Of a stretch of DNA of 64,000 nucleotides, positions 1,680 to 22,431 are shown piece after piece. Under the pieces are notes generated by a model. It ran no database searches, was not told the DNA's origin, and saw only the letters and a list, made by a program, of their open reading frames with translations. Position 1 is the first letter of the stretch. Each line of letters begins with the position of its first letter. A program made the position numbers and the translations under genes. The DNA lies in assembly GCA_964234715.1 (NCBI GenBank), contig OZ174281.1. One strand, 5' to 3'. This stretch comes from Podarcis melisellensis. Taxonomy: Eukaryota.

Positions 1680-4039
1680 GTATGTGGAATCATAGCGTGT
1701 TATTCAAAATGACAAATATATTTTTATTTGTGTAACATGCTTCATAGATAGCATGCTTTTCCAGAGGCAGGCAGAGCCACTTGCAAACAATGATATGACC
1801 TACCAGGATGACAGCTTGGTTGTCTTGCGCAAAGCAATTATGGTGCAGTGTCTTAATGGAATTAGAACTTCCTTCCTTCCATTTTACTGTAGAGGAATCC
1901 ATGCTGAAATCAACCCACGCATGACATACTTGTCCTCTGAGTGGCCACCCATGATTCTACCTGGATAGACAGCTTGAGATGGAATGATCCATACTTCACA
2001 GACTGACAATGTGGGTACACAGTGAGGTATTCTGATGACTGGCTTAGCATATGCAAAGAATTGACTTCAACCCACACTCTAACATGTGGTTGGAGTGAAT
2101 CATTGTTTAATCAAACCTTTCTCATACAAAAACACTAAATGCAAACCAATTTATCCTTCAATTTCTAAACAGTAATTTGAAGCATTAATTTGTAAATTAA
2201 TTTATCATGAAGTAGGCCTTTCACAATAGCCACTATTTTTATCTACTCTAAATTGAATCTTTGTGATTTTTAGATTCCTCATATAGTGGGCCAGTACATA
2301 CAGAGCTGGAAATTGAGGCATTTAGATGAGGAACCAGGCTATGGGAGAGTCATTGAACTCTATATGGTTCATGTGACTTGGTGCTATAGTGCATCTACTG
2401 GACATACATTGCCTAGAGAGCGCTGTTTCTTTACAACCCATATTTCCCACCAAAGCATTATCAATGGAACAGAAGTTTGTTTGAAGTAATTTGCCCTTGA
2501 CAGATCTCAAGCTTTTTCAGATATCACAATTTTCTTTTAAGTATATGCAAATAGATCATTTTGTGACTTGTCCTAGTAACGAACCAAGCATGTGTGAAGT
2601 TTTTACTTAGAATTCTAAGTGTATTTTCTTTAGTTTTAATAGCTGTAACATGCTAAATTTGCATTAGAAATATTCAGAGGCCAGAAGTTTAGTTCACTTT
2701 GGCTTATCTCACATTCTACAACCATCCAAAACTAGGAATGGGGCTCTTTTCTCAGACATCAGGGCAGGTTCGTATACTCATGACTACAACACTAAGCAAC
2801 TAAAGGACTTAATGATTTATCACAGGTCTGACATAAGAGATGGGACTTTGATAGCAGGCAGCAGCATCTCAAACACATACATTCCACTGCTAATAAACAA
2901 GTGATGAGAAATAAAGCCAGGACAATGCATGTCTGAATCAACCCTAAGAGTAAGACCAATTGGTCTAGATATTAAATCTATTTAAAATCAGATTCATACC
3001 TTGTGGATGTCGTGTGTCTCAACATACATACAACGGGGAAATTATTGCACCACTGGACATAGTGTATGGCTCAGGGGGAGGCAGAGCAATCTACATGGCA
3101 GGTTTCCCAAAAAAGTGGCCTGGTTTACTGTTGTAGCTAAGAAAAGGAAGTGATCTTCTAAAAAATTCAGTGGAATGTGGCACACTGTAAAGTGTACAGT
3201 TTGTAAAGTTGTCTGATACATGTGCTGAGCAGGTATGAGCAGTTTGCCACATACTCTGACATTAGCTTGGATACAACATTATTCAAGCTAACCTACCGCA
3301 CCTGACCAGAGTTGTCGAGCTCCAGGAGGGCATGGGGGAAAGTACGCCCCACTGCTCACCAGAGGTTGAGGTCCAGTCTTTGGGGGCTATGCCTTGTCAT
3401 GTCTCTTGCCACAGGTGGGGTTTGGCCCACCCAAGGTTGATGTTCAGATTAGCTGCCCACACGTATAATTTCCACAGCAGATGTTATTAATCACATGTGA
3501 CCTTAGTAGGTGTCTTAGTGTCTCCTCTCTTTATTCTTGCATCCAGTTACACTAAGTTTCTTGCAGCCAGGCAATGCATCCCTCTCAAAGCTGAAATGCT
3601 TTCAGATGAGAACATGGCTAGCTGCCACTGTCAGAACGACTCCAAGGAAGTCAGGAGTTTCCTGGGTTCAACAGAGTTACTTTGGCAGCTGACACTGTAC
3701 TTCTCAGATGGCCTTCTCCATGGAGACATTTTTTTTAGATCACTGAAGCAGCCTCTACTTGCTGTGGCTAGAATGATCCACTGAAACGGGTTGGTTTTTT
3801 CCTCCTTCAGTGAAGTTACTCTGGAAGCAGCCACCATGGTTCAGAAAATCCTGCCCCCCTGTTGAACTCTCTATTGACCATATTAATGGAGGTTGTCAGG
3901 TCCAGAACCAATCATCCAATTAGGCTTGGAGGCTTTTTCGTCTTCCTCAATATGCAAATTATAGATAATCAAATGCAGTGTTCATTTTTTTTAAAAAAAA
4001 TCTCTCTTCCACATACCACAGAATAAGTTCCCTAGTCTG

Positions 4040-4340
4040 GTTCACCTCTCTAATCAGCCTCTAATCAGCTTGTTAAAATCAGCCATTTTGAAATCAAATA
4101 CCCTAGTTGCATCCCTTGTCCCAACAGCCCATTCAATTAAATTCATCAGGACTAACTCATGATCGCTTGGTCCAAGGTTATTCCCAACAGCCATTTTATC
4201 TATCATATCCTCACTCCTTGCCAGCACCAAATCCAACATAGCATTTCCTTTTTCCTCAGAAGATTGATTCGCTCCTCATGCATGCAGAGAATGATGACCT
4301 TCTTAACTGGAATCTCTGTAATAGCCATTTCACCTTGATG
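4040..4340 (-). mobile_element. Degraded CR1-clade LINE fragment (end of APE endonuclease domain)
   Basis: Translation LDLVL...VGNNLGPSDHELV...FDFKMADFNKL carries the LDLVL, LGxSDH and DFxKADF motifs of CR1 ORF2; it is interrupted. Confidence 0.75.
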
Positions 4341-16960: not shown

Positions 16961-16963
<3 letters not shown>

Positions 16964-17257
16964 CAGTACAGCCATCTTCTCAGAAAAACTCTTCACAAAG
17001 TTCAAGAGGTCAAGACACAAAGACTTTAGCAACTAATCCACACCTAATGACCCACCTAAGTGGTACTCAGGATATCACTCAAGAAATCACTCAAGATATC
17101 CCTCAGGTAATTAAGGAACAAAAGAAGAAAAGGCACACTAGCCTGGGAACTTCCTCTCTGCCCAGAACATTGGAGGCTATACACCACACCCCCTCAACAG
17201 TATTTATAGGAACTCAAACACTGAGATCCTGCTCTGTTCCAGTAACAAGAAGCCGAA

Positions 17258-17310
17258 AGCACCAGCCTGAAGATGACGAGTGAGACCTCGTCGAAACGTC
17301 GCCTAGACAC
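17258..17310 (+). ncRNA. Minimal type I hammerhead ribozyme motif in pLTR copy 1
   Basis: CUGAAGA-U-[GACGAG/ugagac/CUCGUC]-GAAA-CGUC: core boxes, a perfect 6-bp stem II and a palindromic minimal stem III (ACGU). Predicted cleavage after C17300. Stem I is weak. Confidence 0.75.
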
Positions 17311-18686: not shown

Positions 18687-19222
18687 TCTCCCCACAAAAA
18701 CTGACACCAGATCCAGAGGCACACAGAACGCCATCACCAATCAACCACACCAGACCCAAACCCAGACCCTCTCCACAGATAAATTACAGACACCATCCAG
18801 TAGCCAAACCATGGTGGCACCTCCGGATGCTGCACCCCCCTGCAATCCCTACACAGATCTGGCTGACACAGGCCACAAAACCACAGCTCGCCCCTATACA
18901 CGAAGCCAAGCCAGAGCACAACTAAGTGCAGTACAGCCATCTTCTCAGAAAAACTCTTCACAAAGTTCAAGAGGTCAAGACACAAAGACTTTAGCAACTA
19001 ATCCACACCTAATGACCCACCTAAGTGGTACTCAGGATATCACTCAAGAAATCACTCAAGATATCCCTCAAGTAATTAAGGAACAAAAGAAGAAAAGGCA
19101 CACTAGCCTGGGAACTTCCTCTCTGCCCAGAACATTGGAGGCTATACACCACACCCCCTCAACAGTATTTATAGGAACTCAAACACTGAGATCCTGCTCT
19201 GTTCCAGTAACAAGAAGCCGAA

Positions 19223-19275
19223 AGCACCAGCCTGAAGATGACGAGTGAGACCTCGTCGAAACGTCGCCTAGACAC
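19223..19275 (+). ncRNA. Hammerhead ribozyme motif, copy 3
   Basis: Identical motif; core at 19232-19265. Confidence 0.75.
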
Positions 19276-19382: not shown

Positions 19383-19689
19383 AGCTGAATATAAGAGAAA
19401 TAGACCCGCAGCACCAACTCTCCAACAGATCTTGTTCCCCAATTAGGTTTCTAAGGCCCCTTTGCCCACCCACTGAGCCATAGCTTTGGATTTAGCACAG
19501 AGAACAAGCTAAGTATCTGTGTTTTCTCAGCAGAAGAGAGGATTAGCCCAGCTCTGTTGTTTCCTGATATCACCTCCAGCCAATGTGGTGGGGTGTGGGG
19601 AAGCCTGCCCAGTTTAGCTCTCATCTGAAAGCATCTCCAGCTGGTAGTTTCTCCAGCAGCCAGTCACCTATATGCTTTAGTCTCGCCAA

Positions 19690-22431
19690 AGACTCTCCTC
19701 CCTGAAAGAGAGGGGAGTGGTTGTGGACGGGAGTCCGAGCACCGCTCCTAGCAGGGGGCGTTGCCCCCTGCCTCCAGCTCACCTGGCTGGCACTCACGCC
19801 CCCCCCCGGTGGCCATCCAACCAGGTGCCATGGGGGGGCGTGTCCAGCAGCCTTTATGCTGCAGTGCCAGCCTCCCCGCGGCCTCATTTCTCTTTGTCGT
19901 TGGATTAGCATCAACTGGTGATGAACCCCTGGTGAATAAACCCACTTGTTTCGCGATCCAATGCCTAAGCCAATACCTTTTCATTGCTGTAATCAATAAA
20001 GTTGTGGCCTTTTCTAGCCCATTAACCTTATATCACGTGTCCCTGTGTCTTCATTTTACTTCGCGGGGGTCGGGTCCTCGAACCACAAAGACTCTCCTCC
20101 CTGAAAGAGAGGGGAGTGGTTGTGGACGGGAGCCCGAGCACCGCTCCTAGCAGGGGGCGTTGCCCCCTGCCTCCAGCTCACCTGGCTGGCACTCACGCCC
20201 CCCCCCGGTGGCCATCCAACCAGGTGCCATGGGGGGGCGTGTCCAGCAGCCTTTATGCTGCAGTGCCAGCCTCCCCCCGGCCTCATTTCTCTTTGTCGTT
20301 GGATTAGCATCAACTGGTGATGAACCCCTGGTGAATAAACCCACTTGTTTCGCGATCCAATGCCTAAGCCAATACCTTTTCATTGCTGTAATCAATAAAG
20401 TTGTGGCCTTTTCTAGCCCATTAACCTTATATCACGTGTCCCTGTGTCTTCATTTTACTTCGCGGGGGTCGGGTCCTCGAACCACAAAGACTCTCCTCCC
20501 TGAAAGAGAGGGGAGTGGTTGTGGACGGGAGCCCGAGCACCGCTCCTAGCAGGGGGCGTTGCCCCCTGCCTCCAGCTCACCTGGCTGGCACTCACGCCCC
20601 CCCCCGGTGGCCATCCAACCAGGTGCCATGGGGGGGCGTGTCCAGCAGCCTTTATGCTGCAGTGCCAGCCTCCCCCCCGGCCTCATTTCTCTTTGTCGTC
20701 CTGGGCGAGTCACCCACCCTCCACTCCCTTTGAGTTAGGGCTTAGGTCATTGGCCTTGCTATGGACCTTAGGTTGGTCGCCCCGGTTGCCCGGGGGGCCT
20801 GGTAGGAGTTTTTCCATTTGGCATTAGGCTTTTTGGTTTTTTCGCCTACCTCGTAGCAATCGTCACAACTTTTTGGTGGTATTGGTGGGTAGGTTAGGCA
20901 TTGGAATAATCTGTTGTGGTGTGTTGAAGTGCTAGGTGTGGCCATCGCCTATGCCTTCAATTTCTAGGGGTATTCCGTTAATGGAATCTGGCGGTCGTGT
21001 ATTCCGTCCGAAGCCTGCTTGGCGGGAGGCCATGGCACAACCCTCGGTGACATCAGGGGTGAGCCTATAGTTGGATTAGCATCAACTGGTGATGAACCCC
21101 TGGTGAATAAACCCACTTGTTTCGCGATCCAATGCCTAAGCCAATACCTTTTCATTGCTGTAATCAATAAAGTTGTGGCCTTTTCTAGCCCATTAACCTT
21201 ATATCACGTGTCCCTGTGTCTTCATTTTACTTCGCGGGGGTCGGGTCCTCGAACCACAAAGACTCTCCTCCCTGAAAGAGAGGGGAGTGGTTGTGGACGG
21301 GAGCCCGAGCACCGCTCCTAGCAGGGGGCGTTGCCCCCTGCCTCCAGCTCACCTGGCTGGCACTCACGCCCCCCCCCGGTGGCCATCCAACCAGGTGCCA
21401 TGGGGGGGCGTGTCCAGCAGCCTTTATGCTGCAGTGCCAGCCTCCCCCCGGCCTCATTTCTCTTTGTCGTTGGATTAGCATCAACTGGTGATGAACCCCT
21501 GGTGAATAAACCCACTTGTTTCGCGATCCAATGCCTAAGCCAATACCTTTTCATTGCTGTAATCAATAAAGTTGTGGCCTTTTCTAGCCCATTAACCTTA
21601 TATCACGTGTCCCTGTGTCTTCATTTTACTTCGCGGGGGTCGGGTACTCGAACCACAAAGACTCTCCTCCCTGAAAGAGAGGGGAGTGGTTGTGGACGGG
21701 AGCCCGAGCACCGCTCCTAGCAGGGGGCGTTGCCCCCTGCCTCCAGCTCACCTGGCTGGCACTCACGCCCCCCCCCCGGTGGCCATCCAACCAGGTGCCA
21801 TGGGGGGGCGTGTCCAGCAGCCTTTATGCTGCAGTGCCAGCCTCCCCCCCGGCCTCATTTCTCTTTGTCGTCCTGGGCGAGTCACCCACCCTCCACTCCC
21901 TTTGAGTTAGGGCTTAGGTCATTGGCCTTGCTATGGACCTTAGGTTGGTCGCCCCGGTTGCCCGGGGGGCCTGGTAGGAGTTTTTCCATTTGGCATTAGG
22001 CTTTTTGGTTTTTTCGCCTACCTCGTAGCAATCGTCACAACTTTTTGGTGGTATTGGTGGGTAGGTTAGGCATTGGAATAATCTGTTGTGGTGTGTTGAA
22101 GTGCTAGGTGTGGCCATCGCCTATGCCTTCAATTTCTAGGGGTATTCCGTTAATGGAATCTGGCGGTCGTGTATTCCGTCCGAAGCCTGCTTGGCGGGAG
22201 GCCATGGCACAACCCTCGGTGACATCAGGGGTGAGCCTATAGTTGGATTAGCATCAACTGGTGATGAACCCCTGGTGAATAAACCCACTTGTTTCGCGAT
22301 CCAATGCCTAAGCCAATACCTTTTCATTGCTGTAATCAATAAAGTTGTGGCCTTTTCTAGCCCATTAACCTTATATCACGTGTCCCTGTGTCTTCATTTT
22401 ACTTCGCGGGGGTTGGGTCCTCGAACCACAA
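19690..22431 (+). mobile_element. Non-autonomous Ngaro-type (DIRS-order, tyrosine recombinase) retroelement array A-B-A-B-A-C-B-A-B-A-C-B
   Basis: A (~211 bp): 19690, 20089, 20488, 21260, 21659. B (~188 bp): 19901, 20300, 21072, 21471, 22244. C (372 bp): 20700, 21872. The array contains the split-direct-repeat order A-C-B-A-B (20488-21658). There is no long TSD, only a shared CAA at both ends, and no coding capacity. Confidence 0.8.

What the first reader, a model, noticed from the sequence alone, without database searches (positions are those of the whole stretch)
20081..20125. Every B|A junction folds into a hairpin containing the crossover core
CCACAA (end of B, 20083-20088) pairs with TTGTGG (20120-20125), stacked on ACTCTCCTC/GAGGGGAGT. 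An alternative register AACCAC/GTGGTT extrudes the junction bases. The structure exists only when B is joined to A (also at ~20482, 21254, 21653) and is broken at the integrated ends. This recalls folded single-strand recombination sites (integron attC, CTX phage attP) and could give directionality to integration of a single-stranded cDNA circle.
Basis: inference. Interest (0 to 1): 0.7.

Follow-up and report, generated by a model that had tools for sequence, protein, structure and literature searches.

The report
Self-pairing circle junction of lizard Ngaro
In a small non-coding lizard jumping gene of the Ngaro type, the point where its two end-repeats meet lies inside a long hairpin; this may be how the helper recombinase finds the joining site, but function is not shown.

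Summary
All four B|A junctions (20083, 20482, 21254, 21653) carry the 6-bp CCACAA/TTGTGG stem stacked on the 9-bp ACTCTCCTC/GAGGGGAGT stem. The pairing continues outward to an 82-nt, 30-32-bp hairpin (20063-20144). This is the most stable 86-nt fold in the 64-kb window. The last 26 nt of B pair with A nt 32-56 far better than shuffles do (2 of 2000 reach it). The 3-nt core CAA, shared by both integrated ends, lies in the 5' arm, 16-18 nt from the dyad centre. That position argues against a lox-type duplex site and fits a folded site. The 3' arm is complementary, side by side, to both element termini, like a miniature DIRS-1 ICR. In thousands of contigs from three other organisms, the common variants listed inside the hairpin all fall at unpaired positions. 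No compensatory change was seen, and no other Ngaro family could be fetched, so conservation across families is untested. The sense strand folds better than the cDNA-sense strand, so an RNA role is a serious rival. Whether the substrate is single-stranded DNA, and whether the fold gives directionality, remain untested. Two unchecked scan notes (s1-508148, s1-501933) report similar end hairpins elsewhere in this genome.

The parts
19690..22431 (+). Array of a non-autonomous Ngaro-type element: A(210) B(189) I(373), arranged AB-AB-AIB-AB-AIB. Every unit is delimited by a B|A junction.
   Evidence: copies are 99-100% identical. No ORF with a Pfam match, no Rfam family, no tRNA.
20063..20099 (+). 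5' arm of the junction hairpin: last 26 nt of B (20063-20088) plus first 11 nt of A (20089-20099).
   Evidence: Folds; pair list.
20086..20088 (+). CAA, the crossover or microhomology trinucleotide at the B|A junction. It is paired with TTG 20120-20122 and lies next to a 2x2 internal loop (AG/GG).
   Evidence: The left end reads flank...GTCTCGC-CAA-AGACTC (CAA 19687-19689). The right end reads ...CGAACCA-CAA-GAAATC (CAA 22429-22431). Contigs of three other organisms break at the equivalent of 20086-20091 (table 8).
20100..20108 (+). Terminal loop CCTGAAAGA; the dyad centre is at 20104.
   Evidence: The loop position 20104 is A or G in the family.
20109..20144 (+). 3' arm, wholly inside A. It is complementary side by side to the start of A (via 20109-20117) and to the end of B (via 20120-20144): an ICR-like segment.
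   Evidence: duplex of the B end with A is -24.3 kcal/mol; shuffles give mean -13.6, sd 2.5, and 2 of 2000 reach it; 0 of 298 GC-rich 26-mers of the window reach it.
20462..20543 (+). Second copy of the junction hairpin, identical.
21234..21315 (+). Third copy of the junction hairpin, identical.
21633..21714 (+). Fourth copy of the junction hairpin. Its one private change, C>A at 21646, falls on the unpaired C (equivalent of 20076).
20150..20170 (+). Second hairpin of A: GCAGGGGGC-GTT-GCCCCCTGC, 9 bp perfect.
20184..20271 (+). Third hairpin of A: nested perfect arms of 10 and 11 bp (GGCTGGCACT/AGTGCCAGCC and CACGCCCCCCC/GGGGGGGCGTG).

Best explanation
The B|A junction of this helper-dependent Ngaro family is a self-complementary joining site. 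The last 26 nt of B and the first 11 nt of A pair with a 36-nt segment just inside A, so one arm is complementary to both element termini side by side, a miniature of the DIRS-1 internal complementary region. Proposed mechanism: in a single-stranded or extruded replication intermediate, the fold brings the two termini together and marks them. It presents the CAA trinucleotide in a short duplex next to an unpaired 2x2 spacer. The tyrosine recombinase of an autonomous partner then exchanges strands at CAA with a target that shares only CAA. Circles of AB (399 nt) or AIB (772 nt) entering a genomic CAA, or an existing B|A junction, would give the observed array. Shown here: the fold, its statistical excess, the position of CAA within it, the breakage of the fold at the integrated ends, and the lack of common variants at paired positions. 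Inferred: that a recombinase reads the fold, that the substrate is folded rather than duplex, and which strand is used.
For: The fold is the strongest in the window, with z about -5 on both strands. The B end is complementary to A far beyond shuffles. CAA is shared by both integrated ends with no further duplication. This matches the trinucleotide rule reported for DIRS-order circle junctions (PMC7192593). Contigs of three other organisms break at the same 5-nt span. The crossover lies 16-18 nt from the dyad centre. A lox-type duplex site would cross over in the 9-bp spacer 20100-20108, which the ends exclude, and there is no local dyad around CAA (4 of 11 matches by eye). In attC the crossover triplet likewise sits in a stem away from the hairpin tip (PMC5027507). 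Of the 40 best-supported family variants, 3 fall in the 82-nt hairpin and all 3 are at unpaired positions (20104, 20126, 20140); the exact probability is 0.017 given 22 unpaired of 82. The only private change in a junction copy is also at an unpaired base. In DIRS-1, a segment complementary to both termini is essential after first-strand synthesis, and the cDNA is single-stranded (PMC7192593).
Against: There is no compensatory change, so invariant pairs say nothing about structure as opposed to sequence. Another 114 variants were not listed by the tool. All four junctions are copies of one another. No recombinase is encoded here and none could be tied to the element. No other Ngaro family could be fetched, so generality is unknown. 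The sense strand folds better than the antisense strand (DNA -27.8 against -22.3; three T.G wobbles against one), whereas the DIRS-1 cDNA is antisense. The rest of A is also made of strong hairpins, so self-pairing may be a general property of A and not of the junction. One contig of a relative has an A lacking 20130-~20262, that is, the outer part of the 3' arm (table 5c).
Confidence: 0.4

Rival explanations
1. A structure of the sense RNA. Only read-through genomic RNA that carries B1 joined to A2 can form the hairpin. It could therefore mark replication-competent RNA for packaging or for recognition by the reverse transcriptase, or guide template switching. The position of the crossover inside it would then be incidental.
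For: The sense strand folds better than the antisense strand (RNA -50.4 against -46.6; DNA -27.8 against -22.3). Three wobble pairs are valid only on the sense strand. The common family variants A126G and A140T improve the sense RNA fold (-51.6, -54.5) but not the antisense fold. A as a whole is a chain of three hairpins, as in the cis-acting RNA domains of retroelements. Strand-biased RNA reads of relatives cross the junction (depth about 14 at 21245-21270). An unchecked scan note reports another RNA helix in this element (s1-517314).
Against: Three wobbles against one is not significant. It does not explain why the junction and the CAA core lie inside the stem, nor why the arm is complementary to exactly both termini. 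The RNA reads are mostly under 90% alike and 91% of them run on into unlike sequence, so they come from relatives or fragments. No Rfam family matches.
Confidence: 0.3
2. No function of its own. The inverted repeat would be a by-product, for example a snap-back copying event in the family's founder, or general GC-rich palindromy of A, that happens to span the junction and is carried by a young, nearly identical family.
For: Copies are 99-100% identical, so there has been little time for selection to show. A holds other perfect palindromes. No covariation was seen. One relative lacks part of the 3' arm.
Against: The non-autonomous element keeps only 772 nt and should retain mainly cis-acting parts. 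The hairpin region is conserved across contigs down to 80% likeness, with listed variants only at unpaired bases. The complementarity covers both termini exactly.
Confidence: 0.2
3. An ordinary duplex recombinase site. The two arms would be inverted protein-binding half-sites in double-stranded circle DNA, as in loxP or FRT, with no folding involved.
For: Site-specific recombination sites are typically inverted repeats. The standard DIRS model integrates a double-stranded circle (PMC7192593).
Against: The half-sites (CCACAA-NN-ACTCYCCTC) flank a 9-bp spacer at 20100-20108, but the element ends lie at CAA 20086-20088, 12-14 bp outside that spacer. The two mirrored CAA/TTG are 31 nt apart, far beyond the 6-8 bp stagger of tyrosine recombinases (established knowledge of the family). 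There is no dyad centred on CAA.
Confidence: 0.1

Closest known systems
Ngaro retrotransposons (DIRS order) with split direct repeats A1-[ORFs]-B1A2B2, and their solo AB repeats
   Same: The A and B repeats are arranged AIB-AB. Solo AB units occur, as reported in Cafeteria (PMC8547959). There is no target-site duplication, and a trinucleotide is shared between the circle junction and the target (PMC7192593).
   Different: There are no ORFs: the core is 373 nt, so it depends on a helper. The units form a five-unit array. No junction-spanning hairpin was found in the searchable literature, in which Ngaro elements are characterised by split direct repeats and the ICR is given as a DIRS-like feature.
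DIRS-1 internal complementary region (ICR) and self-complementary circle junction
   Same: One internal segment is complementary to the outer ends of both termini, adjacent to each other. In DIRS-1 it is 33 + 55 nt, essential for retrotransposition, and acts after first-strand synthesis on single-stranded cDNA (PMC7192593).
   Different: Here the segment is 36 nt (about 11 + 25) and lies only 9 nt from the junction, inside the terminal repeat A, so it forms a local hairpin and not a long-range bridge. The element has direct, not inverted, terminal repeats, and its B1A2 copy already templates the junction.
Integron attC sites (folded single-stranded substrate of IntI)
   Same: It is an imperfect hairpin. 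The crossover is at a conserved triplet inside a stem, away from the tip. An unpaired spacer lies beside the triplet and there is a terminal loop. Units are stored as arrays separated by foldable sites, and only microhomology with the partner site is needed (PMC5027507).
   Different: The host is a eukaryote and the element a retroelement. The triplet is CAA, not AAC. The internal loops are nearly symmetric, with no clear extrahelical bases on one arm. The cognate recombinase is unknown, and there is no evidence of single-strand exchange or replicative resolution.
CTX phage attP(+) forked hairpin used by XerCD
   Same: A single-stranded genome folds to create the recombination site, and integration is irreversible because the integrated ends cannot refold (my own knowledge, not checked here).
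   Different: There are no XerC/XerD-type half-sites around a 7-nt central region, and single-strandedness is not shown.

Membership tests
Ngaro-type split-direct-repeat element | Repeats ordered A1 - internal - B1 A2 B2, with A1=A2 and B1=B2 | tested here: met
   AIB-AB occurs at 20488-21469 within the array AB-AB-AIB-AB-AIB.
Ngaro-type split-direct-repeat element | Encodes RT/RNase H and a tyrosine recombinase | tested here: not met
   The internal part is 373 nt. No ORF of the array or of the 10 longest window ORFs matches Pfam. It can therefore only be a non-autonomous derivative.
Ngaro-type split-direct-repeat element | No target-site duplication; a trinucleotide is shared between the circle junction and the target | tested here: met
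   CAA is present at both ends and at every junction. The flanks are otherwise unrelated to each other and to the element.
DIRS-1-type ICR | Internal segment complementary to both outer termini, adjacent to each other | tested here: met
   20109-20144 pairs with 20089-20099 (start of A) and 20063-20088 (end of B), 30-32 bp in all.
DIRS-1-type ICR | Element has inverted terminal repeats, with the ICR near the right repeat | tested here: not met
   The repeats are direct, and the segment lies inside A, 20 nt from the left terminus.
Integron attC-like folded site | Imperfect hairpin with the crossover triplet in a stem (R box) | tested here: met
   CAA 20086-20088 is paired with TTG 20120-20122. 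The crossover is inferred from the ends.
Integron attC-like folded site | Extrahelical bases on one arm that select the strand | tested here: inconclusive
   The internal loops are 1x1, 1x1, 1x1, 2x1 and 2x2. The only asymmetry is one extra A (20081/82 against 20126).
Integron attC-like folded site | Recombined as single-stranded DNA by a cognate recombinase, with replicative resolution | not testable with these tools
   This needs biochemistry or genetics.
Integron attC-like folded site | Structure conserved while sequence varies among sites | tested here: inconclusive
   Only one family was available. The listed variants avoid paired bases, but no compensatory pair was seen. Scans for relatives were empty.

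The most novel reading that the evidence does not exclude
Ngaro-type retrotransposons of vertebrates use a folded, single-stranded junction hairpin as the substrate of their tyrosine recombinase. This would be a eukaryotic counterpart of integron attC or CTX attP, in which one arm acts as a built-in ICR. Small non-coding circles (AB, AIB) would then be captured one after another at B|A junctions, like cassettes.
Probability: 0.2. Interest if true: 0.8.

Novelty: new variant of a known kind. Interest (0 to 1): 0.5.

Why it matters
How tyrosine-recombinase retrotransposons of the DIRS order close and integrate their cDNA is largely unknown. The only experimental work, on DIRS-1, shows single-stranded cDNA and an essential segment complementary to both termini. 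Elements with split direct repeats, such as Ngaro, have been thought to need no such segment. A junction that pairs with a neighbouring segment of its own repeat would link the two architectures. It would also give a concrete, mutable target for testing whether these recombinases read folded DNA. The element is very abundant and young in several lizards, so it is a practical test system.

Tried and rejected
1. I looked for relatives in the window with sensitive blastn. Only the array itself came back.
2. I scanned IMG/VR and the JGI metagenomes for a hairpin motif and for a conserved motif of B. There were no hits.
3. I used the 129-aa spurious ORF spanning the junction as a handle to fetch homologous DNA from protein collections. 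There were no hits.
4. I looked for a Ngaro RT or recombinase seed in the window. The 10 longest ORFs have no Pfam match. Without a seed, autonomous Ngaro elements of other species could not be fetched, so the cross-family covariation test was not done.
5. Rfam and tRNA scans of the array were empty. The nearby microRNA-like matches rest on (AT)n and fall below the gathering scores.
6. Supplements of two papers on DIRS-order (tyrosine-recombinase) retrotransposons hold no element sequences.
7. I tested whether the left flank is a degraded B end. It resembles one over about 12 nt, but local alignment is no better than shuffles, so I rejected this.
8. It is also incompatible with the outer extension.
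9. A duplex lox-type reading was rejected on geometry.
10. RNA raw reads gave no transcript starts or ends (table 6).

Full report
**What is there**

Bases 19690-22431 are an array of three building blocks: A (210 nt), B (189 nt) and a 373-nt internal piece I. They are ordered AB-AB-AIB-AB-AIB, and the copies are 99-100% identical. AIB-AB is the split-direct-repeat layout A1-internal-B1A2B2 of Ngaro retrotransposons. The internal piece is non-coding, and nothing in the array or in the ten longest ORFs of the window matches Pfam. This is therefore a helper-dependent derivative. Rfam and ARAGORN find nothing in the array. Earlier notes of the scan call the genome a lacertid lizard; I did not test that.

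**The ends**

- The left flank joins A as ...GTCTCGC-CAA-AGACTC.
- B joins the right flank as ...CGAACCA-CAA-GAAATC.
- Each internal junction reads ...CGAACCA-CAA-AGACTC.

Three bases, CAA, are therefore shared by element and target, and nothing else is duplicated. The flanks are not related to the element. This matches the rule reported for the DIRS order: a species-specific trinucleotide at the circle junction, found at both ends after integration (PMC7192593). In contigs of three other organisms, many pieces that match B stop at the equivalent of 20086-20091 and run on into unrelated sequence. Pieces that match A start in the same span (table 8). The boundary is therefore a property of many insertions, not only of this locus.

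**The observation**

At the left end it has two mismatches, both in the flank. As DNA, 20081-20125 folds exactly as described, at -11.3 kcal/mol with z -3.1. The alternative register is weaker, at -6.5 kcal/mol. The integrated ends lose the fold.

- 20063-20144 forms 30 pairs as DNA (-27.8 kcal/mol, z -5.2) and 32 pairs as RNA (-50.4, z -4.8 on the plus strand; -46.6, z -5.1 on the minus strand).
- It is the most stable of 6200 sliding 86-nt windows, against a background mean of -6.8 and sd of 3.4.
- The last 26 nt of B alone pair with A at -24.3 kcal/mol. Dinucleotide shuffles give -13.6 ± 2.5, 2 of 2000 reach the observed value, and none of 298 GC-rich 26-mers from the rest of the window does.

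The four junctions are copies of one another and count as one observation.

**Anatomy**

- The 5' arm is the end of B (26 nt) plus the start of A (11 nt).
- The loop is CCTGAAAGA, with the dyad centre at 20104.
- The 3' arm (20109-20144) lies wholly in A.
- CAA (20086-20088) is paired with TTG (20120-20122), directly beside a 2x2 internal loop (AG/GG). The 9-bp inner stem lies above it and about 15 further pairs lie below it.
- The 3' arm is thus complementary, side by side, to both termini of the element. That is the definition of the internal complementary region of DIRS-1, which is 33 + 55 nt, essential for retrotransposition, and acts after first-strand synthesis on single-stranded cDNA (PMC7192593).
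- The rest of A consists of two more strong hairpins, at 20150-20170 and 20184-20271. B has none.

**Geometry**

If the arms were duplex half-sites of a lox-type site, strand exchange would fall in the 9-bp spacer at 20100-20108. The real ends lie 12-14 bp outside that spacer. The two mirrored CAA/TTG are 31 nt apart, far more than the 6-8-bp stagger of tyrosine recombinases (established knowledge). I found no dyad centred on CAA (4 of 11 matches by eye). A crossover triplet inside a stem, away from the hairpin tip and next to an unpaired spacer, is the layout of integron attC sites. Those are recombined as folded single strands (PMC5027507).

**Variation**

I laid contigs of three DNA runs from other organisms, plus one RNA run, on I-B-A at 80% likeness. 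This gave 3400-4200 contig pieces per DNA run, so the family is very abundant.

- Of the 40 best-supported variant sites, three lie in the 82-nt hairpin: 20104 (loop), 20126 (bulge, G in most copies) and 20140 (1x1 loop).
- All three are unpaired positions. The exact probability is 0.017 given 22 unpaired of 82.
- The single private change in a junction copy of the window also hits an unpaired C.
- Caveats: 114 further variants were not listed, the tool gives no linkage between sites, and no compensatory pair was seen. This shows conservation, not structure.
- One contig of a relative has a short A that lacks 20130 to about 20262, and therefore the outer part of the 3' arm (table 5c).

**Which strand**

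- The plus (sense) strand folds better: -27.8 against -22.3 kcal/mol as DNA, and -50.4 against -46.6 as RNA.
- Three T.G wobbles are valid only on the plus strand, and one only on the minus strand.
- The common variants A126G and A140T improve the sense RNA fold (-51.6, -54.5) but not the antisense fold.
- Three against one is not significant, but it leans toward RNA or plus-strand DNA. The single-stranded cDNA of DIRS-1 is antisense.
- Strand-biased RNA reads of relatives cross the junction at low depth. They are mostly under 90% alike and gave no transcript ends.

**Reading**

My best explanation, at 0.4, is that the junction is a self-pairing joining site. In a single-stranded or extruded intermediate, the fold brings both termini together and marks them. 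It presents CAA for strand exchange by a helper-encoded tyrosine recombinase. Circles of AB or AIB entering a genomic CAA or a resident junction would build the array.

The rivals are:

- A sense-RNA signal that only read-through B1-A2 RNA can form (0.3).
- A by-product without function in a young family (0.2).
- An ordinary duplex site (0.1), which the geometry disfavours.

That the substrate is single-stranded DNA, and that the fold gives directionality, is not shown. An asymmetric CAA would set orientation by itself.

**Novelty**

The searchable literature does not describe a junction-spanning hairpin or an ICR-like segment in Ngaro elements. It treats the ICR as a feature of DIRS-like elements and split direct repeats as the feature of Ngaro. 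Solo AB repeats are known (PMC8547959). Two unchecked notes of this scan report end hairpins in other candidate tyrosine-recombinase elements of the same genome (s1-508148; s1-501933, which reports a GCAA core). If they hold, they would point to a general feature.

**Limits**

No relatives outside the family could be fetched, and no Ngaro protein seed was available.

Noticed in passing
window 20089-20298 (each A copy): Repeat A is almost entirely three strong hairpins: the junction hairpin, a perfect 9-bp one at 20150-20170, and nested perfect 10- and 11-bp arms at 20184-20271. B has none. The whole repeat looks like a structured module.
   Followed up: partly
window 21129-21181 (repeat B), RNA run X23: About 280-320 RNA reads cover only a 52-nt fragment of B, with six fixed differences and constant unrelated sequence on both sides. 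They lie on the opposite strand to the other element reads. This looks like a B fragment embedded in an abundant transcript of another locus (tables 2, 3, 7).
   Followed up: no
table 5c (run X14, joint 21300 to 21065): A relative has a short A: the first 41 nt are joined through 38 nt resembling the tail of A directly to B. It lacks the second and third hairpins and the outer part of the junction hairpin's 3' arm.
   Followed up: no
window 19895-19905, 20694-20704, 21066-21076: The A|B, A|I and I|B boundaries share the short overlaps GT/GTTGG. The solo AB unit could therefore have arisen from AIB by a template switch or deletion at microhomology.
   Followed up: no
window 19677-19689: The last 10-12 nt of the left flank (TTTAGTCTCGCCAA) loosely resemble the end of B (CTCG..CCA.AA). 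This is not significant by alignment but could hint at a weak target preference.
   Followed up: partly
window 16962-17261 and 18927-19226: A 300-nt perfect direct repeat, 1965 nt apart, lies just upstream of the array, with (AT)n runs and 12-nt tandem repeats. Scan note s1-517336 reports hammerhead cores here. The Rfam hits there are (AT)n-driven microRNA matches below the gathering scores.
   Followed up: no
window 20208-20215, 20273-20280 and equivalents: The poly-C runs in A differ in length by 1-2 nt between copies. Apart from three substitutions, these are the only differences in the array.
   Followed up: no
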